DNA of 63,538 bases, filler included, from Ministeria vibrans ATCC 50519 (lineage: Eukaryota; Protista; Filasterea), in assembly GCA_943704425.1 (NCBI GenBank). It is 9 parts of 9 records of this genome, joined end to end, with 100 filler letters (N's around TTAATTAATTAA, not from the genome) between each part and the next. Parts side by side here need not be neighbours in the genome. Positions count along the whole stretch, not along the records: positions 15,727 to 35,599 come from CALSCP010000848.1; 8 more parts are not named here. One strand, 5' to 3'. The notes beneath the pieces are model-generated. The model did not search any database. It was not told where the DNA came from and saw only the letters and a list, made by a program, of their open reading frames with translations. Below, one piece after another: positions 15,727 to 51,694 of the stretch. The first letter of the stretch is position 1. Each line of letters begins with the position of its first letter. Position numbers and translations under genes: made by a program.

Positions 15727-15835
<109 letters not shown>

Positions 15836-15848
15836 CTTTGTGTTGTAG

Positions 15849-16329
15849 TGGCGATTTGAATATCACTGTCAAATTTCTTGTTGAGGTGGATAAACTTGTG
15901 CAGCTCATTGAATCGCCCATTTTCACCTGTACGACAAACAAACACGCCTATTCTCTCTTGATACTAATGGACGGTATGATATGATACAGACCTGCGACTG
16001 CAGTTGCTGGAGCCCGAGAGCTATGCGTCGCTGGTCAAGACGCTCTATGGGCTGCTGATGCTCCTGCCGCAGTCGTCTGCCTTTGTCCTTCTCCAGAAAC
16101 GACTTGCTGCCATTCCCAATTTGTTTGCCTACCTCCCGAACATGTAAGTCACATAATATGGTGTGTCTGATTGACCTGTGGTTCTAATGGGGCATTTGGT
16201 GTGTGTAGGAAAGCAACGAAGAAACCGGAGAAGCTCAAGGACGCAAAGGAATTGATGGATGCCTTTATTGCGACCCAGGAGAAACACGCAAAGCTCATTA
16301 TGAAGAATGCCCGCCACATGTACGAGTGA
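15849..16329 (+). CDS. VAC14: VAC14 C-terminal exons
   Basis: [18 protein letters not shown] / LRLQLLEP...[25 protein letters not shown]; TGA at 16327-16329. Confidence 0.93.
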
Positions 16330-16476
16330 AGTGACAGACACAACAAGTGGGTTACGACGTAAATAGCGGCATCAGACGAAAATTCAAAACACTTCACCCT
16401 TTGCTTTTCTATTCGTTGACAATCAGTGCGTATTCTTCCTTGAATCAAGTGTTATAAGCAACCCTTCGAGGAAAGA

Positions 16477-18989
16477 ATGGGAGGCGAGAAGAAGCAAATC
16501 ATTGCGTTGGATGAAGACGTATGTGGTCGTTTTCTCCCATCTGTACAAACCAACGGGAGCGACTGATGCGCATAACACGGTAGAAGATATTCACAACTGC
16601 CAAAATATCAGTCAAGTGTCAACAATGATAATTCATAACTTTTCTTCCTTCTGAATCTGTGCCAGCTGACTATAGAATAGCCGACGAACTGGCTGCGTAG
16701 CTGTGCAGGAGGCTGGTTGGACTCATGACGGATCGAGAGAAGCATCAACTGACGGCCATGGGCTGGAAAGAGGGTATGAAGAGGGTACAGTCGTGTCGGA
16801 GGGGCCGCCTCGCTCACGCTCCCTTCTCTCTTCTCTCCTCGCTCCCTTGCTCCGCTTCTGCGCGCTGTGTAGGTGCCGAGAGCAAGGCCCCTCTGTGGCG
16901 CTGCTTTGGCCAGACAACTCTGTCGGGCTTGCCGCAGTTTAGCGACGCGGGAAGGTCGGTTGTGCGCTTGGTGGGTCATGCCGATGTGTCGCTCACTCCT
17001 CTCCGCTGCTCTGCAGGTCCTCTGGTGTCCGGTGGATGTGGATGATCATTGCATTTGTTGGAATAGGCCTCTCGATCAACGGAACCATCACGGCCGTCAA
17101 CACTTACTTGGCGTACACGCGAGAGCAGGCGAGAGCCACTCTTGACACTCGCCCTCTTTCCTTACAGATACGAAACCTCCACCTCGATTACAGTCTTCCC
17201 GCGCAGTGCTGCGCGTTTCCCCGCCGTCACCATGTGTCCTCTCTCTGTGTACTCGCAAGCGAAGATGGAGACGTCGCCCTACGCCTCCCTTACCAACGCG
17301 TCCTTCCTCGACGACCTTACCGTCACCTTGGCGTCGATCAATGCCTCTGAGCGTGCCAATCTCGTGCCCGACTCGCCTATTATCGGTGCTTTCTATAATG
17401 GTGCGCTTCTTCCCGAGTACGCCATTGAAAAGGTCGATTACGGTCCGCTCTATGGAGTCTGCTACACTTACAATGTAACTATATCATTGTAGTATTGTTC
17501 CCTTTCCCTCACTCTCTCCTTCACCGTCTTTTTTTTTCCTAGATCAACGGCACTGCGCCTAGTGTAGGGCTGGGCGGGCGTCGCTACGGCTTCACTGTGT
17601 ACCTCAACTCGAATATTGATGACCAAATGAGTATATTCGAGGCGGAAGGCTTCCTTGTGACAGTGCATCCACCCAAGACTCGTGCAGACATCCAAAAGAA
17701 CGTACGCCGACGCGACGTACTATGTGCGCAGTACATTATGTGTGTCTGTCGGTGTAATCCCCTTGCATTGCTTTTAGGCGTTTGCAGTGGGTCCTGGGCA
17801 GTACATGCGGGCGGGACTGCAGGAGGAGACGCACACGTCGCCGGGCTTTCCCTACTCGCTGTGCGAGCCCAGTCCGCCTCCTGGCACCTCTACCGAAGAG
17901 TATCTCAACCAGGTTGAGTTCTGTCGCCAGACCTGTCTTGGCAGTAATCTTCTTTTTCAGTGCGGCTGTGTAAGCCTGTGACTTCCCTTTGATCTGCCTC
18001 GAAGGCCTCTAAGTGCTCCCTCGTCTTTAGATTACTCCATCCCTCATCTACTTGTTCTTCGACCGTTTTGGCACGAACAACATCACCTTTTGTGACACAC
18101 CCGCCCAAGCACTGTGCATTAGCGAACTCTCTGCTCAGATTGAGGACGTGTCCGCCGACGTCTTTCAGCGCATCTGTGGTACTCCAAGAAAGAATAAGCA
18201 AACACAACGGAGTTGCTCAGCAATCCATTTTTAGAGTGTCCTGCACCTCTCTGCTACAGCACCAACTATCAAGTCACTACGTCGTCCGCTTTGTGGCCTA
18301 ATCCCCAGACAGCCCAAGGTACTCTCACTTTCAAAAAGTAAATGAACCAGTTTCCAACCAGTTCACTCACCGGCCTGCACTCTTTTTTCCAAAGACATAT
18401 CCGCTGTGTTTAACTACACTGCCGCTCAGATTGAGCGCAATGGCGTGAGCCTTCAGGTTTTCTACACTGTACGACCACACACACATATATACGTACATGT
18501 GTAAAAGCAAGTAGAGACTGTCTCATCCTTGTGTTGATCTCCTTTTCCAGACGTTGGATCGAGTGGATGTCAAACAAGAACCGTCGACTTCTCTTTCAGA
18601 GACCATTTCAAGTCAGACCATTTCTCTCTTTCTCTGCTCTGGACTGATATGTGTGTGTTTAGACATTGGTGGTGTTGTGGGTTTGTTTATCGGTGCGTCC
18701 TTGCTCACTGCATTTGAACTTATTGAGTTCTCTCTCTTACTCATTCCTCGAAAGTGGCGCAAAAAGATTTGGTAAAGCCCTTTGAATAATAATTTGTGAT
18801 GTATTTACAAGTACGCTCTGGATAGGTTGCACCGCACAGCGTACGAAGTCAAGCCGACTGTATCCAACGACGAAGATCACGACTCGTCAGGAAAGGTCTC
18901 CATTGCACTGCACTCACTTCCCGTACGAACACACACACACACACATCCTTATACCAATACACCACACCACAAAGACACAAAGACATACT

Positions 18990-19040
<51 letters not shown>

Positions 19041-19150
19041 CTTTGTTTTTCTCACTGTAGAGTGCCTCGTCGCTAAGCGGTGGGGGAAACAACTCATCTG
19101 CGACCGTCTTCACCGACCTGTACAAACCAATGGGAGCGACTGACGCATGA
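16477..19150 (+). CDS. DEG/ENaC (ASIC/ENaC family) ion channel subunit, multi-exon; start uncertain
   Basis: Pre-M1 FGQTTLSG; TM1 RWMWMIIAFVGIGLS; FPAVTMC; thumb cysteines (CRQTC..QCGC, CPAPLCYSTNY..SSALWP); TM2 ISNIGGVVGLFIGASLLTAFELIE. Confidence 0.9.
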
Positions 19151-19193
19151 CGCATAGTAGAACCCAATTTATTATTATTATACTACATTTAAT

Positions 19194-20546
19194 TCACATG
19201 AGCGACTTGCACGGACTGAAGGAGAGAGTGCTGAACTGATGAGTGAGGTCGAAGGCAGTGACGATGTTGTTAGCATTGTTGCGCTGGACGTAGCTGTGCC
19301 AGTTGAGTTTGTGATTGCGACGGTGGTGGGGCGTAGAAGGTGTGTGAGCGAGACGTAGGGACATATGGACGGGGCCCTTGGGCCGGCTGAGCGAGATGTG
19401 AACGAGCGAAGGGTCTGCTGTGTCGTACTCGAAGCGGCCGTGTTCGACAAGGGACGACGTAATGCCGTGCGGCTGTGAGTGGTGTGACTGCACTGCACCA
19501 CTGTGGATCGACGAGAGTGGGACGGTGCGACGGGGAGCACGGCACAGACGCGCCACAACGGACCGAATGTCGTCCGCCGTGCTCACTTCCCAGACAGAGC
19601 CGTCGCGGGCAAAGCGGAACAACCGGTGATAGGTGATGGTGTGCACGGGATTGTAGTAGAGGGTCATGCCCTTTTCGCCCTCGCGCACGTACGACACGCG
19701 TGAGACGTAGACGCCGTGGAAGAGAACGCGCGGACGCAGATAGAACGCACGCCGCCACCCACTGAAGCCATTGGGCAATATGGTTCGAGCAAGTGTGTCT
19801 TTGTCGTGAGGCCATGTACGAGCGCACACTTGACGCCATAGCAGGGGGTCGCGTGCCAGGACGTAAAAGTAGCGACACACTGCGGCGCACTCGTCGAGCG
19901 ATCCGGCGTCAATGCGTCCTCCCGCCACGTGGTCCAGGATCTTCTGCAGGATTTCTACCGGTAACACCGAAATGTGCTTGGACCATTGGTCCCGAGCACG
20001 CCTCAACGAGAGTGACTGATCGTTTTTCAGCGACTCATACAACCAGTTCCCTTCGCGTTCTCCTTCTCCTCTCTCCGCTTCCCCCTCGACTGTTGCTGCT
20101 GCTGCTGCTGCTGCTGCTGACGCACTCGAGGGATGCTCGTCCACCATGCTATCGTCCCGTGGCGTGGTGTCTACGCTAAGCTTGTCCATTTGCGCGACGA
20201 GTGCCCGTGCCTCCTGGCGCATGCGTGCCTCCACCGTGCTGTCCTTTTGGATCGCGGCACGATAGAACCGAATTGCGTCGAAGGCCGAGCCGCCGCGCTC
20301 TTGTCGCTCGGCTTCGCGCCACAGCGCGTCTGCTTGGCTTGCCAGCGACGGCTCCATCTCTCGTCGGCTGTTGTTGCTGGCGTCGTCTTGTGCGTCGGCT
20401 TTTGTTGATGTTGTTGTGGCTGACTGAGACGCACCAGATTGCGCAAGCGCCTGTCTCCGTCTCAATTCCGCCTCCCATTCCTCTCGAAATGCAGCAAGCG
20501 TGTCTGTGGGCGTCATGGGGGCGACGGGGGGGAGCTCGTCGAGCAT
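19194..20546 (-). CDS. FBXO9: F-box only protein 9 / Hrt3 (a small 5' exon near 20626 is likely)
   Basis: FREEWEAEL; DAIRFYRAAIQKD; F-box ISVLPVEILQKI; RPRVLFHGVYVSRVSYVREGE; HTITYHRLFRF. Confidence 0.9.
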   Translation of the reverse strand: MLDELPPVAPMTPTDTLAAFREEWEAELRRRQALAQSGASQSATTTSTKADAQDDASNNSRREMEPSLASQADALWREAERQERGGSAFDAIRFYRAAIQKDSTVEARMRQEARALVAQMDKLSVDTTPRDDSMVDEHPSSASAAAAAAAATVEGEAERGEGEREGNWLYESLKNDQSLSLRRARDQWSKHISVLPVEILQKILDHVAGGRIDAGSLDECAAVCRYFYVLARDPLLWRQVCARTWPHDKDTLARTILPNGFSGWRRAFYLRPRVLFHGVYVSRVSYVREGEKGMTLYYNPVHTITYHRLFRFARDGSVWEVSTADDIRSVVARLCRAPRRTVPLSSIHSGAVQSHHSQPHGITSSLVEHGRFEYDTADPSLVHISLSRPKGPVHMSLRLAHTPSTPHHRRNHKLNWHSYVQRNNANNIVTAFDLTHQFSTLSFSPCKSLM

Positions 20547-20971
20547 CAGGTCGTCCTACACAGCACAATGAGCAACACGCGAAGGACCGAGAGAGAGCGC
20601 GCATGACTTGCCTCCAGGTCGTCCATCTGCTTGGGTGTGTATGGGTGTGCGTGAGGGTATGCGGAGGTGGGTGTAGGCCTCCGTGGCAGAGGTGCGTGGT
20701 GCTTTGGGGAAGAGTGACGAAAGTCCGAACGATAAAAAAAATCGGAAACGTCCCACTTGTGCTAGACTGTATGCGTGGCGATGGAGGCTGTCCTGGTGGG
20801 GTGCAGTGGCGTATACCCTGGGGTGGGGGTTGATTTGTGGGCGTTTCGAGGGTGTTTGAGAAAATGCGATTGGAACTTGGATGAGAGTGCGCCAAAAAAA
20901 ATATTCGCGCCCTGACTGGATCGAAATAAATTTTACAAAATCATTCAAATCGATCTCTTTTTGTGTCCCCC

Positions 20972-23900
20972 ATGCTTACACGCACTCGTTGGACCGCTCG
21001 CCCCACGGCTATGGACGTGTCGGACGCGGTGACGCCGCCTAGCAAGAAGGGAGCGAACGAGGCGGCTTTGACACCGCCGCGTCGCCGAAAGGCAGTTCGC
21101 CGACGCCGCGGCAACGACGATGTGTATGGTGAAGAGGAAGAGGAACTTGATGACTCCAGTATACCCTTTCCGCCTTCGCCACAACGGCCAATTTTGCCTG
21201 GACTTGAAGAAGCGTTTCTCCAAGAAACCGGTACGCTACCCTCACGTTCGCGTGCTCTCTCTCCCAAATCCGTCTGTTCCATTGTCCTTTAATCTGGTCC
21301 TCGTGATGGGTTTCGTCGCGAGATGGCTTTGCGTCGACAGTTTTCGTTTTTTTTTCTCGTTTTGTCAGCGTGTGATTTGTCATTTGTTATGTTGCTTATC
21401 AACTCTGCGTGTCCTCTGTCCATCGTCTCTGATCGATTGTGTGATATTGCTGCTTTTGTTTTTTGTGTCCGCTAGGCGTACGCTTTGTTGTTTTAGTATG
21501 GAGCAACTCTCTTTGTGAGTTGAGTTGCACTAACTTTATTTGTCAGCCTGTGATTTGTAATTTTGTTATGTTGTTCATGAAAACTGATCAAACCTGCTTG
21601 TCCTTTTTTTTGTCTTCTCTGAGTGATTGTGTGGTGTTGGTGCTTTTGTTTTTCATGTCCGCCAGGCGCCGTTTATTATGCACTCACTCTCTTTGTGAGT
21701 TGAGTTGGATTAACCTTGTGTCGCATTGTCTTGTTGTTGCGGTGTTAACGGTGGCATGGTTTTTGCGTTGAGTGTCACTCGATTGTGGAAATAGGGGTTG
21801 CTGTTCTGCTGAGAAATCATGCTAGTCGAAAAAATAAGATAGAGAATCAATACTATTTGCTTCTCTTTTGATATTGTGACATTCATTTCTTCAATATTGT
21901 TTCTAATCAAATTTATGTTGTTGTGGTTGCAGGGACGTACATTTCACCGCCGTCGGTTCAGTTCCGCCAGAGTAAACGACCGCGCAAACACCTTGTGTCG
22001 CCCGAGCGTCCCACCGCCGACACGACCACCATCAAAATACGCACCGTTGTCACTTCTCCATCCTCCTTCTCCCCCTCCTCCTCTTCCAGCACCGCTCACG
22101 CCGCTGCAGTCTCGACTCGCGCGTCTGCTTTACCATCATCGTCGTTGTCGTCAACATCTGTGCGTCCCGTGCGCGAGTCGGCGCGTCGTCCTCGTTCACT
22201 CTTCGCGTCCTCTCACGACTCCATTGTGGGTCCCGTGGCACTGTCGCCCTCCCCACCGCGTCCCACCACCACCATCTCCATTGCGTCATCGGCAACTCCC
22301 ACTCCGCGTGACTTTCTTCTTCCCTCCCTCTTTCCCGTGCCCCTCGACGCCCCCGACTGGTCCGCGTGCATCAGCCCCGCCGATCTCGTCGCTTCTTTCT
22401 CCTGGGAGCTCGCCTGCATTCTCAACGAGCGATGGGCCAACGCTCGCTACTACAAAGTATGATAATAAATGATGTGCTTGATACTGTATGACTTGCTACT
22501 TACAATTGGTTGTCTTTTTTTTTTTTTTTCCAGTCTCTGTTTGGGACATTTATGCGAGACTATGCGGCTGCGAGCTGGGCAGTGCGCGAGCAACTGGTGG
22601 CCATTGTCGACGAGCTGGGGTTGCAGTCGGCGCTGATCAGTCGCCATGTGGATGCATCTGCGGATGAAGGGGCGCGTGCAGCGGTGCAGGCTACCTTTGG
22701 CGACGAAGGGCGTTTGTTTGGGCCGTTGTTCAATGTCCAACGTGATCCCAAGGTGGTTCTGTTGCGGGTGAAGCTGCCGCTGCGCCGTCGAAGTGACCTG
22801 GCTATTGTGGCAAGTATCCTCGAAGAATGGTGGACCTCCGTCGCCGAGCCTTTTTGCATGCGTGAGCTGCGTCTACGGTCCAAGGGGGATGTGTGTCGTC
22901 TCATTCGTGTGCCCTATGCCGATCCCAGTGCGCCTCATGTCATGCGCGTGCGTCTGCGAATGCACCGTCTTGGCACCAAGAAGATCTGGCGTCGTTTGGT
23001 GCTCCCTTCGAACGCGTCTCTAGCCGACTTGGCCGTGTGGGCCGCGCAATGCTTTGGCTGGAACCTTGCCAACCGCACCAACTATTCGTTTCTGGTGCGC
23101 GACAAGGGCGTCTTCCACGAGGGTGACGACGAGGAGGAAGGCGAGAGGGGTGATGGCGAGTCGCGCTATGTCGATGTTGTGACGATGAGTCCACGAGTGG
23201 CCGCGTCAACGACACCTGTGAAGAAGAAGAAGAAGGAGAAGAAGAAGACGACGAAAAAGGGAGCGCCAGTAACGACAAAGAAGATGTCAATTAAGGACAA
23301 GCGTAGGAGAAAGGACATGAGCGATGCTATTGGTCATGACAACGACGAGGAGGCAGTCAATGATGGTGATGGCGATGATGTGAGTGACGGCGAAGGTGGT
23401 GGTGGTGATGATGATGATGATGGTGATGGTGATGATGATGACAACGACGACGACGATACTGACGCTGATGGGCGACGACGACGCTCTGGCCGACGTCTTG
23501 CCAAGGTGTCTGCCAAAGTGTTGCGTGCACTTTCGTCGACGGTGCGTGCAGAAGAGGACGAGGAGGAGGAGGAGGACGAGGACGACGCGCGACACCGAGC
23601 CGTTGATGGCGTGCGCATTACCGAGTACCACGGTCTGTTGGGCAATGGCGAGGCGGTGGAGCAATTGCGCTCTCTGTGGCACTTGTCCGAGGGTCGCATT
23701 GACTACCGGCCTTCCGCGAGTGCTGCCGAGCCTTTTGTCCTCGATGGCAACACAGGTGTGCTTACCGACGAGGACATTGTGTCGCTGCAGGTGCCTCCAC
23801 GTGCCGTCGCGCGTCGTCACGCGGTGCCTCTGCTGCGCGCAGACCAAGCGATTCTGTCGCATGTGTTGCGCCCTGCCGAGCTCACGGGGGGCGTGCATCC

Positions 23901-24233
23901 GTCGCTCACCGTGACCCTTTCGATCGCAGGCATGGGCGAGGACGCCCACTCGGTTGAGCTTGAAGAGGTCATGCCGCGTGTCAAGGGCCAAGTGCTGCCC
24001 GCCGTCACTGGGGGTGCAAGGTAAATTTTAAGTTTATGAATGTGTGTTTGTGTTTCATTTGATATAATTATATTCATGTGTGTGTGTACGCGCCTGTGGG
24101 TGTTGACCTGCTTTCTTTGTGTAGGACTCCGGACAAACGCAACAACTGGAGTTCGCCTGGCACAGAGCAATTTTCCAAGCGCGCGGTGAACCTCAGCCTC
24201 ACTCATGCGGTGTTCACCACCTCCCCCAAATGA
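20972..24233 (+). CDS. Low-complexity protein with split pRiA4b-ORF3-like domain
   Basis: RVRLRMHRLGTKKIWRRLVLPSNASLADLAVWAAQCFGW and GEDAHSVELEEVMPRVKGQVLPAVTGGAR resemble the two halves of the domain; GT-AG introns link ORFs 20963, 21923 and 22510; TGA at 24231-24233. Confidence 0.6.
21361..21716. repeat. Diverged tandem duplication (~180 bp x2) in an intron
   Basis: ttgtcagc(g/c)tgtgatttgt...ctctctttgtgagttgagttg at ~21361-21535 and ~21540-21716. Confidence 0.8.
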
Positions 24234-24326: not shown

Positions 24327-25423
24327 CTACGTCGAGAAAAGATAGAGTTGTCCAAAGATGCAAATATCAATGGCGAGCTGGACGGAGCCGCATAGAATGA
24401 ACTGGAAAGCAGACTGCTTCCATACGAAGTAGATCGTCTTGAAAAGGTCGCCAACGAACCAACCCAGGGCCATATAAATGCTATGAGAGAGTGAAAAAAA
24501 AAAGATTAGAGAGCATGACAGAGAAGTGAGAGTGCGAAAGAGAGAGAGTCTCTTATATAGAATTATACAAATTATGACAATTTCGCTGCTCTTTGTTTTG
24601 TACATAGTCTTGTTTCGACATGTTTCGAAATGGAGTAGTTAATTCACTATTATAATTCTTATATCTAATTATATGATTGTGTGTGTGTGCGTGTGTGTGT
24701 GTGTGTGGTTGGTGTGTCGTAGCAGTGCCTTGTCGCCGTGCTCTACGTACCTCATTCCTTTGGTTGAGCGTGACTTCTGGTTCTTGATGAGTTGAGGGAG
24801 TGCAAGAGTCGACTCGAGCATGAGTGAAGCAAAGCCAAGCACCTCGACGTAGATGGGGTTGCTGTTAAGAAGAAGTCCAAGACATGCTAGGATGCCGCTG
24901 AATGCCCCGAGCGCAACGACGTAGTCGACAAACTCGCTCCATTGCCAAAAAGTAGCCAACAAGTTCAAGTCTACGAAAAGTTGAGAATCAAGTGCGTTCT
25001 TGCTTGGACTGAGTGCGCAAAGGAAAACCTGCTAGGCGAACGGGCGTCTTGCTGGGCCCGTCGTCTCGATTCAGACGGACGCACAGCTCGAGAAGCAACA
25101 GCTGGACAAGGATCATGAAGAGCGCCTGAAGGAGCAAGGGCGTTTCAAAGGGACGCCCGAGCCAGAAGAAGCACCGACCAATCTGGGAGAGCAGCAGCAC
25201 CAGACAGACCATGGTCGAGAACCCCTTGGCGCTCTTGCTGCTGCGGATGTTAAGGTACTGTGGGACGTATGGCAGCGCCTACGCGGGAGAGAGGGAGAGA
25301 GAGAGAGGGGGGGGGGAGAGAAAGAGGGTGTTTTTGCTTGTTCAAAACAGAGAAAACGGCACGTACTCCGCCGACGATCATGACCAGGCTGGCCGCCGAT
25401 GAGAGCATTTCAATTGGGTCCAT
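24327..25423 (-). CDS. SLC66A2: PQ-loop protein SLC66A2/PQLC1 (yeast Any1-like)
   Basis: PYVPQY..I...KGFSTMVCLVLL, FFWLGRPFETPLLLQ, FWQWSEF, ESTLALPQL, GDLFKTIYF, QFILCG. Confidence 0.92.
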
Positions 25424-27365: not shown

Positions 27366-29509
27366 ATGGCGGATCTCGGTGCAGGACTTGCGATTGACTC
27401 TATTATCAAAGCAGCGCGTTATGTGATGGAGGCGCGTCGACGCCAGAAAAACCTTAACCATGATGCGAATGAGCTTGCGGTAAGAGACTCAACGCCCATT
27501 CCCCTTCTAACAGAAAAATATCCGTGGATATATGCCACTGACAAGAAAGACGTCATGTTGTATCTTCTGCGCTTACCCAGTCTGTATGTTGATCAGTATG
27601 TGTGATGCAACACCGGATACACTCCTTTCGCTTACACCCCTTTTCCTTGTTCCTTCAAATTTCTTTCAAATTTCTCCCGCTCGTATTGAACCCATATTCG
27701 TGTGGACTTGCAGGTCTCACCTTCGTCTCACTTCTTAGAACGCAATGCGAATCACATACGATAATGTTCTTGAACCCGCTCGTCAGCGCATGGTAGGCGT
27801 GGAGGCTTCGGCAGCCTGGAGTGCGCTGGCGGGTACCATCAATGACTGCAAAGCGCTTCTTCGTCGCAAAGCGAAGGAAAAAGGCAACTTGGAGTACACG
27901 ACGGCCGACACAGAGCTAGTCATCCGTCTGAAGAACCAGCTCAAGGAGTACTCGCAAGAAGTGCAGACCTTTGTTGACATCCGCATCAAGAAGCAAGAGG
28001 AAGAAGCGAAACTTCACCCCGAGTTGGATCTTCGTGATCCGAAAGCCCTTCTCGCACTGCCGGGTGTCGCTCAGCACATGGTCAACTATTTCCGCAGCAA
28101 CCCCAACGCGGCAATTGGTAAGTGCCAAACAATGACAATTATTTTGTTGCTAAAGACGTTGTGTTTTCCCAAAGAACACGAGTATGCATCGCTCGATGCA
28201 CTGCGTGACACTCTGACGGACAAGGGAGTGGACGGAATCCAGCTGATTGTTGCCCTCGACTTCACCAAGGTACTGAAACAAACACCAAGCAAAATATAAT
28301 AGCATACTTTTTCAGAGCAACATGACCAGCGGCCGTAAGTCGTTTGGAGAGCCCCTTCACAGTACGAAAACTCGTAGTAGATAAACTGATATTATTGCTC
28401 TAAAATTACGTCTTTTGTTTTCAGCGATCAGTGATCAGCGCCAGAATCCTTATCAGCGGGTAAAGCGAGAGACAATAGAGAAGGATAAGAAAAAATGGAG
28501 AGAGGGAGAAGAGAGAGAGAGAGTGTGTGTGGAAAAAGAAACAAAGTGATAGAAAGAGAGCATGGAAAAAGAAACAAAGACTAGTGATAGAGAGAGAGGG
28601 TGTGGAAAAAGAAACAAAGTGATAGAGAGAGAGCNNNNNNNNNNNNNNNNNNNNNNNNNNNNNNNNNNNNNNNNNNNNNNNNNNNNNNNNNNNNNNNNNN
28701 NNNNNNNNNNNNNNNNNNNNNNNNNNNNNNNNNNNNNNNNNNNNNNNNNNNNNNNNNNNNNNNNNNNNNNNNNNNNNNNNNNNNNNNNNNNNNNNNNNNN
28801 NNNNNNNNNNNNNNNNNNNNNNNNNNNNNNNNNNNNNNNNNNNNNNNNNNNNNNNNNNNNNNNNNNNNNNNNNNNNNNNNNNNNCCCCCCCCCCCCCCCC
28901 CCCAAGGAGTGCATTGATGCGATTGTGGAGGCATCGCACTACCCCTTGAGCATTGTCTGTGTGGGAGTGGGCGACGGTCCCTGGGACAAGATGCGCAAGT
29001 TTGACGATCGCATTGAAGGTCGAGAGTTTGACAACTTTGATTTTGTGGAGTACGATCCGCAGGTGAGCGCAAAAATAATAATAATAAATAAATAAAATAT
29101 AATTATTATTATTATTATAGTAATAATAATAATAATTATTATTATTATTATTATTGTTATTATTCGTATTATTCGTACTATTCTTGTTATTTGTATTATT
29201 CGTATTATTCGTATTATTATTATCATTATTATTATTCGTATTAATAATAAATAAATAAATAAAATAATAATTATTATTATTATTTTTTATAATATTATTA
29301 TTATTATTATTGCTATTAATATTCGTATTATTAATTATTACTTTTCTCGATTCTATTTACTTTCTTATTGATTACTTTTATTATAGGTTCACGTTGACTC
29401 TGCTTCGCTTTGCAAGGATATTCTCAAGGAGATTCCCGAGCAGTACACGCGAATCACAACCCTCAGTCTGTTTGATAAGCTGGCAATTGAGAACAAAAAC
29501 GCGAAGTAA
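27366..29509 (+). CDS. RGLG-type copine VWA protein without RING, with ~140-aa helical N-terminal domain; middle exons hidden in N gap
   Basis: LIVALDFTK|[60 protein letters not shown]; TAA at 29507-29509. Confidence 0.85.
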
Positions 29510-33015: not shown

Positions 33016-34604
33016 GATGAGATGGCTATAAAAAAGTAGGAACCCCCAAGAGGGTCGTCACTGTGAGTCGTACGGTAAAGGGGCAATTTATCGAATTTAA
33101 GTGTGATATTTCAAGTCTTGACAACGGCATTCAATGAATACGAGACGAGATTTCCAGCGGCATTGGCCACTTCCTCCCCCTGGCCAGCCAGGCCTGTATA
33201 GTGTTTGTTGTCTCAAATTCCTCAATGTTTGTAACCCACACGTAAAAAATGTCACACAAGACACGACGGGTTACTACATACACTCGTCTTTTGTGTTGGG
33301 GTGAAATTCAGTGGAGGGAAAAAATTGTTGGCAAAAATAAAAAAAAACAACACAGAGACGTCGGTGTGGCGAATCTTGGCAAAGTGCTCAGATGGAATCA
33401 CTATTTCCGAATGAAGCACAAAGGAGAATCGGCTGGTATGTACTTGCGGGAAAGAGATAGCGTTTTTTTTGATTGCAATTTTAATGTTGTTGACGGTATG
33501 AAAAATGTTTGACAAAGAAAAAGATTTTGGGGTGATGATCTCTAAGCAAACGTGTTGGATTGAAGTCACTATTTACCAAAAACAGCAAACTAGGAGCGAG
33601 CGGCTTGAAATACAAGAGAGGAAGGCGTGTTGTTTTTTGGACGATTTTCTTTGTTTGGCCAACTGGGGGGGGGGGGGGGTGGGGCCAACGAAGCAAAACA
33701 ACTTTCCTGTCGCGGCCGAAGCTAAGGGGCCAGCTTGATGTCATGAGTTACGACTTGGTGACTACCATTGGCGTTTTTTTTTGGGTTTGGTGAGCATTGG
33801 GACGAATACATTGCGTGAAAAATAAGCGAAAAAAAACACCCCCGACAAAACGGCGCACAAAATTATCCACTGTCCACTCTCATCTCGCGTGAAACAACAC
33901 AATAAACAGAAACAAAGGAAGTTCAAAAGAACCAGCGCTTGAACTCATGAAAATGGGGGTTTAGGTACGACAATAACAGAGAGTGAGCAGTGTGGGTTTC
34001 AAAAAAGAGCAAACAGCGCCTCATCTCATTCTTTTGAGACACAACAATGAAACGTACTCTGAATTTGTTGAGGGCTCAAAAGGTTCAAAAAAGTGACGAA
34101 CTTGAAGTGAACAGTGGAAGCTCAAGCAAGTAGAAAAAGGCAAGGGCGCTCAACTGCGGATTGAAATACTGACTGCAAGGCCAGCCTTTGTGCGTAGCGC
34201 GTGCATATTTAGGCCCCTGCGCTGAACTTCCGCTGTCTGGGCCTGAGTGCTTTGAGCAGACAGTCGTTGTCTGAGAGCTTGCCTTCTATGGAGGTTGGCG
34301 GGTTGCATGCTGCTTGATGTACACGATTGTGAAGCTGTGCGCGTTGAAGGCTTCGCACGCTACTACCGACACGAACCATTACAAAGACGGGTTCGTCGTC
34401 GATAGAATATTTTCGGAATATCTTCAAGGGGCGGCGCTTCACGTCGTAAACAACCCTCCAGTGCTGTTTGCCGTTTGGTTTACACACCTCTTCCTTCAGC
34501 TCGATTGTACTCTGAGTGCGAGTTTAGCCCTGCGCGAGTCTTTCCATTTTCTGCGCCAAATTGGAAGTCCCACGTTAGGCTAAGTTAGGCTAAGTAGTAG
34601 CTAC

Positions 34605-34800
34605 TTAGAGCAAAAGCTTCATTGTACAAGACAATCTACGTAGCCATTCAAAGCGGCTGCTTCACCCTCGCAGGAGCCAAAGCGGACATTCCGAGAGACT
34701 TGATGCAGAGCCGGTTGTCTCCCCTTGCCTGGACTTGGCATTCATTGTTTCGCCACACTCTCTGCACGCCCGTGCACACCCGTCTGTTGGGAGCGACGAT
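34605..34800 (-). mobile_element. Further copy of the same retroelement 3' end with degenerate zinc-knuckle coding (CRECGE...ECP)
   Basis: GCAAAAGCTTCATTGTACAAGACAATCTA...AAGCGGCTGCTTCACC...CGGACATTCCGAGAGACTT on the + strand. Confidence 0.6.
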
Positions 34801-34840
34801 CCATTTGGATTAAAGAGCCATTTCAAAGCCATTGTGATAC

Positions 34841-34875
<35 letters not shown>

Positions 34876-34876
<1 letters not shown>

Positions 34877-34969
34877 TATAATAAATTATTGTTATTATTA
34901 TTATTATTATTATTATTGTTATTATTATTATTATTATTATTATTGTTATTATTATTGTTATTATTATTA

Positions 34970-35007
<38 letters not shown>

Positions 35008-35560
35008 GTTAAACTCAAACGGGTTCGGGGCAGTGACCACAGGTGGGACAGACCTGCAGGGCTCGTTGCGCGGAGGCAATTGCAGCTGTGACTGTTTGTG
35101 CGGTTGCGACTGTGGATGCAACTGCGGGCGCATTGAATATGACGTGTTCTCTGCAGGGGACCGTTCGTAACGTGCGGGTTTGGTGGGGTGAACTAAAGAG
35201 GCAGAACCGAAAAGTGACAAATTATCAAGCAGTTCTGCTCCTTGGACAGCCGGGGCTTCAAATTTGTCCTCGAACGCGTTGATAACCGCGCGCATCTTCT
35301 CCGGTGCGCGTGCCACAAAAATAGTGAATTATTTTATAATTATAAGAAAATAAATAGAGAATCGAGAGCTGTACTCAATGTCAAAACAAAGCAGCACAAT
35401 ACTTCCGCCGTAGACTTCCAGACGAGAATATAATAATAATAATAATAATAAATTTTATGCTTAACTGTTTGTTTCGCCCACTTCACGCTGTTGCGCCATG
35501 CATCGTCTAGACCATTGGCTTCAACAACACATCTTGCTTAATATGCGCAAAGTACGAAAG
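34876..35560 (-). CDS. 3' exons of an unidentified protein, possibly ending in poly-Asn
   Basis: Open frame 35316-34876 with ordinary composition then (AAT)n; small upstream exon-like blocks; no family motif recognised. Confidence 0.35.
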
Positions 35561-35599
35561 CGGGTGGAAAGTTTGAATTCAAGAGGATCATTGCAGAGT

Positions 35600-35699
35600 N
35601 NNNNNNNNNNNNNNNNNNNNNNNNNNNNNNNNNNNNNNNNNNNTTAATTAATTAANNNNNNNNNNNNNNNNNNNNNNNNNNNNNNNNNNNNNNNNNNNN
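35600..35699. other. Artificial contig linker
   Basis: N44-TTAATTAATTAA-N44. Confidence 0.98.
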
Positions 35700-35787
<88 letters not shown>

Positions 35788-35831
35788 CACTTATGTCTAA
35801 CCTGTGTATGTGTGTGTGTGTGTCGTCATAG

Positions 35832-36836
35832 GCTGGTGACAACATTGTGTCAATCAACGAGCAGCCCATGTCTGGCACGAGCCACCACAATGCCGTCACT
35901 GCCATCAAGAACTCAGGAAACACTGTCAATCTTACTGTCTCTCGCAACAAAGGTGATAAATTAAATGCTATCATTATCGAGTTTGGCACTGACGTGGTTA
36001 CTTTTTTATTTTGTCTCTCTCGCTGTGTTTTTTTTGTCTGTACCGTGCGCAGAGGTGTCTGGGTTTCCCGATTCGATCCGAGTGAAGATGAACAAAGAGC
36101 CGGGAGTGTCTGGCTGGGGCTTTATGATGATTGGTGGCAGCGAAGCAAACCGCATTGTGACCGTCAGCAAGGTTCTTGAGGGGTCTGTAGCATCAAAGAA
36201 GGGTGCACTCAAGGTTATTATATGTGCATATTTATGGAACTCACTTTGCTCACACATACACACACACTCTCTCTCTTTCTGATTTTAGACTGGCGATGAG
36301 ATTCTGACGGTGAACGGTGAGAATGTGATTGGTCTGTCGCACCACGACGCCGTGGGACTCGTCAAGAAAGCAGGCAGTACGCTTGAGCTCACGCTGCGCC
36401 GTCGTCCAACGATGGCCAGCCGCAGTAGCAGCAAGACTAGTGGTGTTGCATTGAATGCTACCACGGCGGCAGTGACTACACCTTCTCCGGCCGCCACATC
36501 AACAGCGGCAGCCACAACAACTCCGACCAAGACCACCACGACTGAAGCTGCTGCTGCTGCTGCTCCTGTTGCCGCCGCCGCTGCTGCTACTACTACTACT
36601 GCTGCTGCTACTACTGCTGCTGCTTCCACTGCCAGTGCGAACACCAATGGTCCTCCCCCCGTTACTCCCTCTCGTGCTGCCATTCGCCGCACTTCCTCCT
36701 ACGAACTTATGTGCTCTCTCTCAGACAGGTACACCGAAAGAATTCATAGCATTGTATTGTGTCGCTCATTCCTCGTTGTTTGTTTTTATTTAGTCCTCTG
36801 GCGAAGCCTTCTGCTTTCAAGCTCGATCTCATGTGA
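35832..36836 (+). CDS. Multi-PDZ protein, 3' part (at least two PDZ domains, then Ala/Thr-rich tail)
   Basis: GDNIVSINEQPMSGTSHHNAVTAIK; GWGFMMIGG; GDEILTVNGENVIGLSHHDAVGLVK; TGA at 36834-36836. Confidence 0.88.
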
Positions 36837-37143
36837 TTGAATGAACTTTTTTGACTTTTTTTTTCCATCATTCCATTCTGTGCTTATTGGAAAAATGGAC
36901 CAACCTTGAATAGAGAAAGAAAGAGGGTCGAAATGCTTATATTCAAGTCATAATAATCCCAGTCAGTGCTCACTGACAGTCTGTCCCAGCAAAGACTCAC
37001 AAGCTTGAGTGAGAGTTGAGTCTTTTGTCTTGACTCTAAAGTCTTATCACAAATCACTGACTAAACCAAATTCTCACCTAAATCCTAATGGCTAATACAG
37101 ATTACTCACTCTGAGACACTCTCTTTTTGACTTCAACTTTGCA

Positions 37144-37188
37144 ATGTCTAGCGAACCGCTGTTGAAGGACAACGGCGCCAATGCCTAC
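37144..37188 (+). CDS. Probable first exon of a truncated gene (MSSEPLLKDNGANAY)
   Basis: ATG followed by a gtaag donor; remainder lost at contig end. Confidence 0.35.
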
Positions 37189-37595
37189 GTAAGAAACCCC
37201 CCACCCTCTATCTTAGCATTGTCTGTTCTTTTTCGAACACGCAGAGAGACAGACAGAGAAAAAAAAAATGAAAAGAACCTCTCATGCTCGCAAATCGCAC
37301 GTTATGCGATGCGTGAGAGCACAGCGACACTGCGCACGCTTCACCACGCGCCCATTGACGAAGCAGCGGCTGCGTCCGGGTCCGCTCGCGCCCGTTGGCG
37401 TCCGTCGTGTGGATGACACCGATAAAGTGCGACATGGGCGCGCCGGACGCGTCTGCTGCAGCCACGCCGCGCCCATGCGCACTCCCACTGCGCGCCCCGT
37501 CCACACATACACACACTCACACCGTCGTATCGCTTCATTTCTCTCTCCTTCTTCTTTGCTTCTTCTCCTCTTTCTCTCTCTCCTTTTTTTTTTTT

Positions 37596-37695
37596 NNNNN
37601 NNNNNNNNNNNNNNNNNNNNNNNNNNNNNNNNNNNNNNNTTAATTAATTAANNNNNNNNNNNNNNNNNNNNNNNNNNNNNNNNNNNNNNNNNNNN
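37596..37695. other. Artificial contig linker
   Basis: N44-TTAATTAATTAA-N44. Confidence 0.98.
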
Positions 37696-37757
<62 letters not shown>

Positions 37758-37794
37758 CAGTGTGTGTGTTCTCCGATCATTCACCATTGTGTAG

Positions 37795-37953
37795 TGCTGT
37801 GACACCGTGTACTACACCCGAGTGGATCTTGATGTCGAGTGCGACACTTTCTTCCCGGAACTTCCAGAGTCAGAGTGGCGGTTGGACAGTGAGCAAGAGC
37901 TGATGGAAGAGAAAGGGACCACCTTTCAGTTTCAGGTGTTCAAAAGAGTGTAA
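37795..37953 (+). CDS. DHFR: Dihydrofolate reductase last exon (monofunctional)
   Basis: Not in the ORF track: CCDTVYYTRVDLDVECDTFFPELPESEWRLDSEQELMEEKGTTFQFQVFKRV*. Confidence 0.88.
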   Translation, partial: CCDTVYYTRVDLDVECDTFFPELPESEWRLDSEQELMEEKGTTFQFQVFKRV

Positions 37954-38147
37954 CGTTCGTTAATGTTATTGCATCTTTTCTTACGTCGTCTTTCCAATGA
38001 AAACCTAGCTCGCCTAAAAGTATTCTTATAAACCCTATTACTTTTTGACGTTTCGCTCTGATAACGTCATCTTTTCCGCTCCATTCAATGAAATTATTTC
38101 ACTCAAATGAGTAATGACTCGACAATACAAATTTTTTTGTTTATCTC

Positions 38148-39533
38148 ATGGAGTTTATCGGCAACGGTCCAACTCAGCCATCGAGACTGGTGTACGACAG
38201 TGATGATGATGAGCTGTCGTCTTTTGTTCCCGCTAGCGTTGGATTTGATGGAATTGGGAAACCAGAGTGGTAATCACTGCAGAACACATTTTGCATATTT
38301 TTGCTCACTCCTCCTCGCGCTGTACACACGGCAGTGTGCTTACGAGAGGCATCGTAGCAATCGGAACAGCTTCGTGTGCTTTAGTGCAGGCTGCCTATGG
38401 CGACGCACTGAGCGTACTCGGTTGTGTTTCAACGGAGAACATTCACGACCAAGACAGCTCAAGAATAAGTATACACACCACACAGACACACCACACATAC
38501 ACATCACACAGACACATATACATTCACACCACACCACAAAGACATAGATACACACCACAATTACACACGCACACACACCACAAAGACGCACTCACACGCC
38601 ATGAAAACACACTCACGCACACCATGAAAACACACTCACACACCATGAACACACACTCACACACACCATGAAAACACACTCGCACACACCATGGAAACAC
38701 ACTCACACACACCATGAAAACACACTCACACACACCATGAAAACACACTCACACACAGCATGAACACACACTCACACACACCATGAAAACACACTCACAC
38801 ACACCATGAAAACACACTCACACACACCATGAAAACACACTCACACACACCATGAAAACACACTCACACACACCATGAAAACACACTCGCACACACCATG
38901 AAAACACACCCACACACACCATGAACAACTCCATGAAAACACACTCACACCCGTATCACCCTCATTTGATTTTTATTGCATTTTGTAGCCATTGCCAATG
39001 TGTACGCCGTTACGTCACAAGACATTGCCATTGTGTTGGTGGCCGAGACAGTTGACGCAGAGTTGGCGCGCGCATTTGCCTCGCTTCTTGCTTCAGCGTC
39101 GTCCACCTCAACAGTGACGCAGTGGTACGTCCACACGCTGCGTGCCGCCTCGTCAAGTCCCTTCCACCCTGTCGACACCGACGGCGGACCATTGTTGCGT
39201 GCTCTCCACAGCGCCAACACAGACACTGCCGCTGCCTCGTTCACCACAAAAGACGTTCCTTCCCTCGAGCCTGGCGTCACCCTTGACGGCCTCACCGCCA
39301 GTCTTGTCGAACTCGCAACAATCACGCGCACTTTCACCTGCACCGTCCTCTTGGCCTTCTTCGAACCCGGCTACGTCCTCGCCGCCGCCACTCTTCTTTC
39401 TCCTCACCTTCTCCTCTCCTCTCCCACCCCAATCGACCTCTCCCTTCTCCAACGCCACCTCTCTCTCCTTGAATCAGACTCTCGTGCTGTCTCTCACCCC
39501 GAACGCTCCGTCCCCGACACTCTCTACATGTAA
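38148..39533 (+). CDS. PSMG1: Proteasome assembly chaperone 1
   Basis: PSRLVYDSDDDE N-terminus; LLRALHS, PSLEPGVTLDGLTASLV; C-terminal HbYX motif LYM*. Confidence 0.72.
38599..38950. repeat. Intronic 23-bp minisatellite (CCATGAAAACACACTCACACACA) x ~15
   Basis: Direct reading. Confidence 0.92.
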
Positions 39534-45565: not shown

Positions 45566-45840
45566 AATAATTATGAGTATAAAATTTGAAAATAATTATT
45601 ACTAATATGACAGTGAGTACACAGACGGACCGTCTACTCAATATTCAGGGAGAGAAGAAATATCAATATGTTTTATCTAACACTGAATCTATCATCACTC
45701 ATCTATGGACTACGGCGAAAGCATCCAGCCACCAGGGTTGTAATCTCATTGAATGGATGACTTGCATTTCTCTTTTTTGACCTTGTTCTCTGAGTGTCTC
45801 TTTACACTTTCGATTGTACTAATTGTTTTTGGTTTGTTTA

Positions 45841-46664: not shown

Positions 46665-46799
46665 GCTAAACAAGGCCAAGAAATAACAATTATTTTGAGT
46701 TATTTACTTATTCTTGACAGATCGAGATGAGTAATGATCTTTCCCAAGAAATCTTTCACTTTCTTTTACTCGAAAAAAAAAAAAAAAAAATCAATCCTC

Positions 46800-46899
46800 N
46801 NNNNNNNNNNNNNNNNNNNNNNNNNNNNNNNNNNNNNNNNNNNTTAATTAATTAANNNNNNNNNNNNNNNNNNNNNNNNNNNNNNNNNNNNNNNNNNNN
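46800..46899. other. Artificial contig linker
   Basis: N44-TTAATTAATTAA-N44. Confidence 0.98.
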
Positions 46900-47001
<102 letters not shown>

Positions 47002-47067
47002 TCTCTCTCTTTCTCTCTCTCTGGTGCCCATTGTGTCATGTAGGAAATTAAAGATATAATTATTGTA

Positions 47068-47533: not shown

Positions 47534-47628
<95 letters not shown>

Positions 47629-48365: not shown

Positions 48366-48489
48366 GATGAAAGTCGATGAAAAAGAATGAAACTTTAGTC
48401 AGAGTGTCAGACACACTGACAGTCTGACACACTGCTGACCGCTCTGATGATCTGATCACACTTTTATACCTTTTATTCTACTCAACACT

Positions 48490-51694
<3,205 letters not shown>

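What the first reader, a model, noticed from the sequence alone, without database searches (positions are those of the whole stretch)
16477..19150. Complete intron-rich DEG/ENaC channel in an apparently non-animal genome
Seen: TM1, FPAVTMC, palm strands, Cys-rich thumb, WP and TM2 with the GAS belt, spread over many short exons in host style, on the same contig as VAC14, FBXO9, an RGLG-type copine and a CRT-like transporter. Knowledge: DEG/ENaCs are overwhelmingly metazoan, with only sporadic protist homologues reported. Inference: an informative out-group channel for the origin of ASIC/ENaC gating; the region after FPAVTMC is short, suggesting a compact finger domain.
Basis: partly seen in the sequence, partly recalled or inferred. 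Interest (0 to 1): 0.8.

Follow-up and report, generated by a model that had tools for sequence, protein, structure and literature searches.

The report
DEG/ENaC channel gene in Ministeria
A complete, intron-rich gene for an ASIC/ENaC-family (DEG/ENaC) ion channel sits between ordinary host genes in the genome of the single-celled animal relative Ministeria vibrans, giving a culturable non-animal out-group for this channel family, though homologues in such protists have been reported before.

Summary
At 16477-19150 (+) there is an uninterrupted 14-exon gene with 13 GT-AG introns of 51-182 nt and 1614 coding bases without an internal stop. Its exons match the Pfam ASC (DEG/ENaC) profile in colinear order. 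It has two hydrophobic helices, FPAVTMC after TM1 and a 10-cysteine thumb pattern. TM2 reads IGG..GLFIGAS..T..E, aligning with the GAS belt of solved ASIC1.

The host is not an animal. The assembly's 55,949-bp mitochondrial contig matches the published Ministeria vibrans mtDNA in size, UGA=Trp, ribosomal-protein genes and 12 of 14 protein lengths. The nuclear genome has the opisthokont EF-1alpha insertion, T-box genes and integrin-beta genes.

The gene lies 148 nt after VAC14 and 44 nt from a convergent FBXO9-like gene, with no gaps. Three paralogues sit on other contigs, and intron positions differ between paralogues. It is therefore a resident gene, not contamination.

Differences from textbook members are Ser-Gly instead of the His-Gly gating motif, a short finger region, one missing disulphide pair, an uncertain start codon and a duplicated LYKPxGATDA tail motif.

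DEG/ENaC homologues are already published for Tunicaraptor, Cafeteria and choanoflagellates. This is a new member of a known kind. Interest is moderate.

The parts
15850..16329 (+). 3' end of the upstream host gene VAC14. It is cut by the contig start, and its stop codon ends at 16329.
   Evidence: Two exon pieces hit PF11916 Vac14_Fig4_bd at profile 113-137 and 139-179 (E 1.3e-7 and 8.4e-15).
16477..16518 (+). It may instead be 5' UTR or a uORF.
   Evidence: Frame and splice sites. No equivalent was seen in paralogue C2647.
16511..16578 (+). Alternative first exon (ATG 16511, donor GTAGAA, joining at 16709). It would encode a second copy of the VFxxLYKPxGATDA motif at the N-terminus.
   Evidence: This alternative is also in frame (18 nt longer). 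The roughly 65-nt repeat with the last exon carries synonymous differences.
16701..16773 (+). E2, cytoplasmic N-terminus. It holds ATG 16725, the start conserved with paralogue C2647 (M..R...GWKEG).
16873..16954 (+). E3, the pre-TM1 segment FGQTTLSGLPQF. This is the position of the family's HG motif, here Ser-Gly.
   Evidence: Sequence. Paralogue C2647 also has SG. Paralogue C913 has TTVHG.
17017..17112 (+). E4, transmembrane helix 1.
   Evidence: Maximum Kyte-Doolittle 19-residue mean of 1.90. Similar to TM1 of paralogues C470 and C2647.
17168..17474 (+). E5, holding the first palm strand, FPAVTMC, a short finger region and YGVCYTYN.
   Evidence: PF00858 profile 50-96. The paralogue profile A1 hits ENaC and ASIC structures at E 4e-9 to 2e-7. 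27 of 30 Atlas neighbours are ASC clusters.
17543..17701 (+). E6, beta-ball and palm strands.
   Evidence: PF00858 profile 199-244, E 0.016. Conserved in paralogues C470 and C2647.
17778..17969 (+). E7, start of the thumb, with five cysteines (C, CxxxC, CxC).
   Evidence: The only PDB hits are FaNaC chains, with all five Cys aligned. 40% identical to C2647.
18031..18178 (+). E8, thumb continued, with three cysteines.
   Evidence: Cys count. Splice sites and frame.
18235..18318 (+). E9, the CxC...C end of the thumb and the conserved WP.
   Evidence: PF00858 profile 363-384. Conserved in C2647 and C913.
18395..18468 (+). E10, a palm strand.
   Evidence: 39% identical to C2647. Splice sites.
18551..18611 (+). 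E11, the last palm strand and the wrist before TM2.
   Evidence: Splice sites and phase.
18663..18771 (+). E12, transmembrane helix 2 with the GAS belt and two lower-pore acidic residues.
   Evidence: PF00858 profile 434-455, E 1.1e-4. Aligns with ASIC1 TM2 at E 0.0025, with GAS on GAS, E on E and E on D. Hydropathy 1.88.
18826..18922 (+). E13, cytoplasmic C-terminal tail.
   Evidence: 47% identical to the equivalent exon of C2647.
19061..19150 (+). E14, the end of the tail with FTDLYKPMGATDA and stop TGA at 19148-19150.
   Evidence: 11 of 13 residues identical to the C-terminus of C2647. The 25-nt core occurs only twice in the genome.
19194..20546 (-). Convergent downstream host gene, a single-exon FBXO9-like F-box protein.
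   Evidence: PF12937 F-box-like (E 6.9e-11) and PF19270 FBO_C (E 3.7e-15).

Best explanation
This is an intact, resident nuclear gene of the filasterean Ministeria vibrans (or a very near relative). It encodes a member of the DEG/ENaC (ASIC/ENaC/degenerin) channel family and is one of at least four paralogues.

Shown here: the exon structure, two membrane helices around a cysteine-rich ectodomain of about 400 residues, the family's post-TM1 motif, the thumb cysteine pattern, and a TM2 with the GAS belt and lower-pore acidic residues.

Inferred from the family's solved structures: the protein forms trimers, alone or with its paralogues, in the plasma membrane. It conducts mainly Na+ through a pore lined by TM2, the ectodomain acts as the sensor that opens the gate, and it should be amiloride-sensitive.

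The stimulus is not known. In seawater any opening would depolarise the cell, so a sensory role fits best, for example touch or prey contact on the filopodia, or pH or another small-ligand cue.

Ser-Gly in place of His-Gly, the short finger and the loss of one disulphide suggest altered gating compared with ASIC and ENaC.
For: Gene model:
- 14 exons and 13 GT-AG introns, 1614 nt in frame, no internal stop.

Family assignment:
- Four exons hit PF00858 colinearly.
- The four-paralogue profile hits ENaC gamma/beta at E 4e-9 and ASIC1 at E 4e-8.
- TM2 aligns with ASIC1.
- The thumb cysteines align with FaNaC.
- 27 of 30 Atlas neighbours are ASC clusters.
- The representative search gave 291 hits at E<=1e-3. 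The full-length ones inspected are ASC-type proteins.

Topology:
- Only E4 and E12 are hydrophobic enough for a membrane helix.
- The exons between them hold 12 Cys and 5 N-glycosylation sequons.

Resident in the host:
- No N between VAC14, this gene and the FBXO9-like gene.
- Paralogues lie on C470, C913 and C2647. C2647 shares the tail exons but differs by intron gain and loss.

Host identity:
- mtDNA of 55,949 bp with UGA=Trp.
- Mitochondrial rps12, rps13, rpl2, rpl14 and rpl16.
- 12 of 14 mitochondrial protein lengths equal those of M. vibrans (against PMC7027106).
- EF-1alpha insertion, T-box genes, integrin beta genes.
Against: - No transcript evidence was found. No full-length transcript-derived copy appeared among 1.84 billion representatives, so the splicing, the start codon and expression are unverified.
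- Each exon alone is below Pfam's gathering score.
- E5 alone finds nothing in the PDB.
- The HG motif is SG.
- The fold and the trimer are therefore inferred, not modelled.
- Ion selectivity, amiloride block and the stimulus are untested.
Confidence: 0.85

Rival explanations
1. The contig is animal contamination or an assembly chimera, so the channel belongs to a small metazoan and not to the protist.
For: The nearest non-self relatives in the big library are intronless, AT-rich ASC proteins from metagenomes. One lies on a contig with homeobox, PAX and p53 genes, so it comes from an animal. The assembly was made from a mixed culture (PMC9492541).
Against: - Those relatives score only 50-61 bits (E 1e-11 to 1e-8) over 104 positions, so they are not close.
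- The gene lies 148 nt from VAC14 and 44 nt from the FBXO9-like gene with no gap.
- Intron size and the (TC)n and (AC)n microsatellites match the other contigs of the assembly.
- Three paralogues lie on contigs of 28-86 kb.
- This gene's E5 exon, and separately the host's HSP70, recur at 100% identity in two independent ENA metagenomes of the SCHR19-1 series.
- The only mitochondrial genome found is filasterean.
Confidence: 0.02
2. The gene was acquired from an animal by horizontal transfer, rather than inherited from the common ancestor of filastereans and animals.
For: The family's distribution outside animals is patchy, and published authors raise lateral transfer as one option (PMC10507113). 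It is absent from Capsaspora according to that paper. The exon-level tree does not recover the four Ministeria copies as one group.
Against: - There are thirteen host-style introns.
- The four paralogues are only 26-49% identical in the E5 region.
- Introns were gained or lost between the two closest paralogues. All of this indicates long residence.
- No animal sequence is close.
- The tree is unresolved rather than contradictory. One origin is not ruled out.
Confidence: 0.08
3. The protein is a family member that no longer conducts by itself. It would be a silent or modulatory subunit that works only in heteromers with the HG-bearing paralogue(s), or a decaying gene.
For: Ser-Gly replaces the His-Gly motif, which established ENaC and ASIC work ties to open probability. 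This knowledge was not tested here. One conserved disulphide pair (SC.F.G..C) present in paralogues C470 and C913 is missing here. E5 alone is too diverged to find any solved structure. No transcript was found.
Against: - The reading frame is intact over 14 exons.
- TM2, the GAS belt and both lower-pore acidic residues are fully conserved.
- The closest paralogue shares the same SG and the same tail motif at 47% identity in E5. This indicates that both copies have been kept by selection since an old duplication.
Confidence: 0.15

Closest known systems
Acid-sensing ion channel 1 (chicken and human ASIC1; solved structures such as 6ave, 7cfs, 9e4a)
   Same: - The TM2 stretch IGG..GLFIGAS.LT..EL aligns with ASIC1, with G-A-S on G-A-S and the two lower-pore acidic positions kept.
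- The post-TM1 strand and FPAVT.C match.
- Same two-helix topology.
   Different: - Ser-Gly instead of His-Gly before TM1.
- 12 rather than 14 ectodomain cysteines.
- A shorter region between the two palm cysteines: 75 residues against about 100 in ASIC1 (the ASIC1 figure is from memory of C94-C195).
- No evidence for proton-sensing residues.
- Different cytoplasmic tails.
Epithelial sodium channel subunits beta and gamma (solved structures 6bqn, 6wth, 9blr)
   Same: These are the best PDB matches of the paralogue profile (E 4e-9). Both FPAVTICN and the ...C.F.G..C...GNCYTFN block align.
   Different: - ENaC gamma has 183 residues between the two cysteines against 75 here, so the large finger and its protease-cleaved inhibitory tracts have no room here.
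- TM2 of this gene did not reach ENaC at E<=10.
- There is no PY motif. The tail ends in LYKPMGATDA instead.
FMRFamide-gated sodium channel FaNaC (solved structures 7yvb, 8on7)
   Same: FaNaC chains are the only PDB chains hit by the first thumb exon, with all five cysteines in register. They were also hit by the E5 profile and by TM2.
   Different: The similarity is weak (E 0.8-1.6). Nothing suggests a peptide-binding pocket or peptide ligands in a filasterean.
Published non-metazoan DEG/ENaC homologues: Tunicaraptor unikontum, Cafeteria roenbergensis and choanoflagellates (PMC10507113, PMC9822975, PMC10770216)
   Same: The same kind of finding: bona fide family members in unicellular eukaryotes, including relatives of animals.
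   Different: - Those sequences could not be compared here, because they were not available by reference.
- No paper in the searchable library mentions Ministeria vibrans together with ENaC.
- PMC10507113 examined only Capsaspora among true filastereans and found none.
- Here the evidence is genomic, with introns and synteny, and shows a four-gene family.

Membership tests
DEG/ENaC (Pfam PF00858, ASC) | Significant match to the family profile along the whole ectodomain and both ends | tested here: met
Four exons match in colinear order at profile 50-96, 199-244, 363-384 and 434-455, with 17.1, 14.7, 12.1 and 21.8 bits. Each is under the 23.6-bit cut-off alone. The paralogue profile of E5 hits ENaC and ASIC structures at E 4e-9.
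DEG/ENaC (Pfam PF00858, ASC) | Two transmembrane helices flanking a large extracellular domain, with short cytoplasmic termini | tested here: met
   Only E4 and E12 reach a hydropathy of 1.9. The seven exons between them carry 12 Cys and 5 N-glycosylation sequons.
DEG/ENaC (Pfam PF00858, ASC) | Post-TM1 motif FPxVTxC and the palm motif G.CYTFN | tested here: met
   FPAVTMC and YGVCYTYN in E5 align with the same motifs of ENaC gamma and beta.
DEG/ENaC (Pfam PF00858, ASC) | Cysteine-rich thumb (ten cysteines: C, CxxxC, CxC, C, C, CxC...C) | tested here: met
   5, 3 and 2 Cys in E7, E8 and E9. The first five are in register with FaNaC. E9 matches profile 363-384.
DEG/ENaC (Pfam PF00858, ASC) | TM2 with the G/S-x-S selectivity filter (GAS belt) and conserved lower-pore acidic residues | tested here: met
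   The residue-by-residue alignment with ASIC1 has GAS on GAS, E on E and E on D. The paralogues read GAT, GAT and GIS.
DEG/ENaC (Pfam PF00858, ASC) | His-Gly (HG) motif in the pre-TM1 re-entrant loop | tested here: not met
   This gene reads TTLSG and its closest paralogue reads TSLSG. Paralogue C913 has the canonical TTVHG. The Gly is kept and the His is Ser. The motif is not universal in the family, so this does not exclude membership.
DEG/ENaC (Pfam PF00858, ASC) | Trimeric assembly, Na+ preference and amiloride block | not testable with these tools
   This needs a full-length model or an experiment. The joined sequence was not folded.
ASIC subfamily (proton-gated) | Proton-sensing determinants (His73 and Lys211 of ASIC1a, acidic pocket) and placement in clade A | not tested
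   No residue-level alignment of this region to ASIC1 was obtained, because E5 alone gave no PDB hit. The PDB scores do not favour ASIC over ENaC.
Host: Filasterea, Ministeria vibrans | Mitochondrial genome as published: 55.9 kb, UGA=Trp, listed ribosomal-protein genes, listed protein lengths | tested here: met
   The contig C1523 is 55,949 bp and carries a tRNA with anticodon tca. rps12, rps13, rpl2, rpl14 and rpl16 are present. 12 of 14 protein lengths are identical (against PMC7027106).
Host: Metazoa (the refutation condition) | Animal-type mtDNA without ribosomal-protein genes | tested here: not met
   Five mitochondrial ribosomal-protein genes were found. The assembly is 29.7 Mb.

The most novel reading that the evidence does not exclude
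The four Ministeria copies may not be a lineage-specific expansion. They may include lineages that split before the metazoan clade A / clade B divergence. The HG-bearing C913 type and the SG-bearing C848/C2647 type would then both be older than animals, and the family would already have been multi-copy and functionally split in the common ancestor of filastereans and animals.

Within that picture, the SG pair would be a previously undescribed channel subtype. Its features would be the short finger, the missing disulphide and the conserved C-terminal LYKPMGA(T/S)DA motif, which holds a YxxM sorting-type signal and is duplicated near this gene's 5' end. Its own trafficking or gating control would replace the PY-motif/Nedd4 logic of ENaC.
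Probability: 0.2. Interest if true: 0.65.

Novelty: new member of a known kind. Interest (0 to 1): 0.45.

Why it matters
DEG/ENaC channels underlie sodium reabsorption, acid sensing, touch and peptide signalling in animals. What the first of them sensed, and where the root of their tree lies, are open questions.

Published trees are rooted on transcriptome sequences from Tunicaraptor. One group could not find the family in the lineages between filastereans and animals and therefore raised lateral transfer (PMC10507113).

A four-gene family with host introns and host synteny in a true, culturable filasterean with a genome assembly argues for vertical descent, with loss in Capsaspora. It also supplies several independent out-group sequences, and it offers real proteins to express and test for the ancestral stimulus and selectivity. 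It extends, rather than overturns, what is known.

Tried and rejected
- Exact look-ups of the two complete neighbouring ORFs found nothing.
- The word-index protein search with the FBXO9-like ORF gave no hit.
- The HSP70 search gave only generic 70-73% matches to animals and plants. That was useless for placing the host, apart from the 100% metagenome copy and the EukProt contaminant.
- Literature searches for the metagenome and MMETSP identifiers returned nothing.
- E5 alone against the PDB gave no hit. E6 alone gave one irrelevant weak hit.
- Cluster look-ups of the best library hits gave no organism names.
- An exon-level tree of 42 sequences and 127 columns left the positions of C470 and C913 unresolved. 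Only the C848+C2647 pair was supported, at 100/99.
- No Rfam family was found in the piece.
- Considered and rejected as host before the mtDNA match: Capsaspora (its mtDNA is 196.9 kb) and any animal.
- In one search the exons were concatenated in memory only to count frame and stop codons.
Full report
**What is in the sequence**

Three-frame translation of 16400-19200 shows a chain of open segments on the + strand. GT...AG introns join them into one reading frame. The model has 14 exons:
- 16477-16518
- 16701-16773
- 16873-16954
- 17017-17112
- 17168-17474
- 17543-17701
- 17778-17969
- 18031-18178
- 18235-18318
- 18395-18468
- 18551-18611
- 18663-18771
- 18826-18922
- 19061-19150

The 13 introns are 51-182 nt long and all begin with GT and end with AG. 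The exons sum to 1614 nt, which is 538 codons, ending in TGA with no internal stop. In one search the exons were concatenated in memory only to count frame and stops. No joined sequence was printed, saved, searched or folded. All searches were made exon by exon, by reference.

**Family assignment**

- E5, E6, E9 and E12 hit Pfam PF00858 (ASC) at profile positions 50-96, 199-244, 363-384 and 434-455. They are in the right order and score 17.1, 14.7, 12.1 and 21.8 bits.
- A profile built from the E5 region of this gene and its three paralogues (alignment A1) hits solved ENaC gamma and beta at E 4e-9 and ASIC1 at E 4e-8. FPAVT.C and the ...C.F.G..C...G.CYTFN block are aligned.
- E12 aligns with ASIC1 TM2 (E 0.0025). 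G-A-S falls on G-A-S, and the two lower-pore acidic residues are conserved.
- E7 finds only FaNaC chains in the whole PDB, with its five cysteines in register.
- Feature-based neighbours of E5 in the ESM Atlas are ASC clusters in 27 of 30 cases.
- Only E4 and E12 are hydrophobic enough for membrane helices. The exons between them hold 12 cysteines and five N-glycosylation sequons.

**Departures from the textbook pattern**

- The pre-TM1 segment reads FGQTTLSG, that is Ser-Gly where the family's HG motif stands. The closest paralogue (C2647) has the same, while paralogue C913 has TTVHG.
- The cysteine pair of the SC.F.G..C motif, present in C470 and C913, is absent here and in C2647. This gives 12 rather than 14 ectodomain cysteines.
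- The two palm cysteines are 75 residues apart, against 183 in ENaC gamma. In 38 other family members the same matched region is 101-253 residues long, against 102 here.

**The start codon is uncertain**

- ATG 16511, with a weaker donor at 16579 and an acceptor at 16708, is also in frame.
- ATG 16725, inside E2, corresponds to the likely start of paralogue C2647, where a stop lies just upstream of M..R...GWKEG.

All three give the same channel core.

**A local repeat**

A stretch of about 65 nt near the 5' end (16528-16571) resembles the end of the last exon (19105-19148). In both places it would encode VF(S/T)(H/D)LYKP(T/M)GATDA. Its 25-nt core occurs only at these two places in the 29.7-Mb genome. 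Paralogue C2647 ends in FQDLYKPMGASDA, so the C-terminal copy is a conserved tail motif. YKPM fits the YxxPhi sorting-signal pattern, which is an inference only. Whether the 5' copy is coding or an intronic relic cannot be told without transcripts.

**Is it the host's own gene?**

- VAC14 ends at 16329, 148 nt before ATG 16477. Two of its exon pieces hit Vac14_Fig4_bd.
- A convergent single-exon F-box gene with F-box-like and FBO_C domains ends 44 nt after the channel's stop.
- There is no N in 15727-20600.
- Intron sizes and the (TC)n and (AC)n microsatellites are the same as on other contigs of the assembly.
- The six-frame family search finds three more ASC loci, on C470, C913 and C2647.
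- C2647 is the sister copy: 47% identity in E5 and the same tail exons. It has E3 and E4 fused and E5 split, so introns have changed since the duplication.
- The E5 exon of this gene and the host's HSP70 each recur at 100% identity in two independent ENA metagenomes of the SCHR19-1 series.

**Who is the host?**

The assembly is 29.7 Mb in 2860 contigs.

- Mitochondrial genome:
  - Contig C1523 is a 55,949-bp AT-rich mitochondrial genome. It has a tRNA with anticodon tca, so UGA codes for Trp.
  - It carries rps12, rps13, rpl2, rpl14 and rpl16. Established knowledge is that animal mtDNAs lack ribosomal-protein genes.
  - PMC7027106 tabulates the M. vibrans mtDNA as 55.9 kb, UGA=Trp, with these ribosomal-protein genes.
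  - Its listed protein lengths are atp6 247, atp8 206, cox2 251, cox3 261, cob 394, nad1 336, nad2 451, nad3 118, nad4 494, nad4L 109, nad5 638 and nad6 198. All twelve are reproduced by the ORFs of this contig.
- Nuclear markers:
  - EF-1alpha carries the insertion between WYK and TL.DALD that marks opisthokonts (the marker is established knowledge).
  - There are two T-box loci and three strong integrin-beta loci.

The host is therefore Ministeria vibrans or a very near relative. It is a filasterean, not an animal.

**Relatives elsewhere**

The profile search of 1.84 billion representatives gave 291 hits at E<=1e-3. The top four are the query exons themselves, called as short ORFs on metagenome contigs. 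The next true relatives score only 50-61 bits and are intronless, AT-rich, full-length ASC proteins. One of them lies on a contig with homeobox, PAX and p53 genes, so it comes from a small animal. Nothing close to the Ministeria genes is present, and no full-length transcript-derived copy was seen.

An exon-level tree supports only the C848+C2647 pair (100/99). It neither supports nor rejects a single origin of the four copies.

**Literature**

- PMC10507113 reports DEG/ENaC homologues in Tunicaraptor unikontum and Cafeteria roenbergensis. Among true filastereans it examined only Capsaspora. It did not find the family in choanoflagellates and discusses loss versus lateral transfer.
- PMC9822975 repeats that exceptions exist in Heterokonta and Filasterea.
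- PMC10770216 states that choanoflagellates have DEG/ENaC homologues.
- No paper in the library mentions Ministeria vibrans together with ENaC.

**How it most likely works**

By homology with solved ASIC, ENaC and FaNaC structures, the protein should form a trimer whose TM2 helices line a Na+-preferring pore. The GAS belt and the two acidic residues below it are intact. The ectodomain would transmit a stimulus to the gate. The stimulus is unknown. For a marine, filopodiate bacterivore, a depolarising sensory channel for touch, prey contact, pH or another small cue is the best guess. The SG motif, the short finger and the missing disulphide predict gating that differs from ASIC and ENaC. Heteromers with the HG-bearing paralogue are possible.

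**Verdict**

The gene is real and complete, it is native, and the host is not an animal. Because unicellular holozoan and heterokont homologues are already published, this is a new member of a known kind. Its value is as genomic, intron- and synteny-backed evidence in a culturable filasterean, and as a source of out-group channels to root the family tree and test ancestral function.

Noticed in passing
L016:1489-3399 (G000:C2175) versus P0122: The EukProt protein labelled Alexandrium margalefii (MMETSP0661) is 636/637 identical to this genome's cytosolic HSP70. That dinoflagellate transcriptome therefore appears to contain Ministeria-like transcripts. The same organism also occurs in the ENA metagenomes SCHR19-1_SAMN09406007 and SCHR19-1_SAMN09406010.
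   Followed up: partly
window 16528-16571 and 19105-19148: A repeat of about 65 nt within the gene encodes VFxxLYKPxGATDA in both copies, with synonymous differences. Its 25-nt core occurs nowhere else in the genome.
   Followed up: partly
L002 2630-2052 (-) = G000:C913; L003 3-1031 (+) = G000:C2647: Two of the three paralogous DEG/ENaC genes lie directly next to genes for EGF-repeat single-pass membrane proteins. This could be chance in an EGF-rich genome.
   Followed up: no
Its identity is open.
   Followed up: partly
G000:C1523 (mtDNA), e.g. 8666-2523 (-), 34093-38172 (+), 45798-50384 (+): Under code 4 the mitochondrial genome holds six very long ORFs (783-2048 aa) rich in K, N and I. I did not identify them.
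   Followed up: no
window 22510-24024 (+): A 504-aa single-exon ORF has a sub-threshold match to PRiA4_ORF3 (24.8 bits against a cut-off of 26.6) and a long acidic low-complexity tract.
   Followed up: no
window 24672-24968 (-), 27745-29092 (+), 28635-28884: There is a PQ-loop protein exon and a copine-domain gene. The copine gene is interrupted by the only assembly gap of the piece (N at 28635-28884). Long (ATT)n/(AAT)n arrays lie at about 28940-29230 and 34660-35320.
   Followed up: partly
L010 (G000:C1833:34-1831, -): The 18S rRNA gene scores 1750 bits against the eukaryotic SSU model. By eye, from memory of the usual consensus, it departs from that consensus in otherwise conserved helices, for example CCATTAGACACGGTTTTAGTCC. 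This would suggest a fairly fast-evolving rRNA.
   Followed up: no
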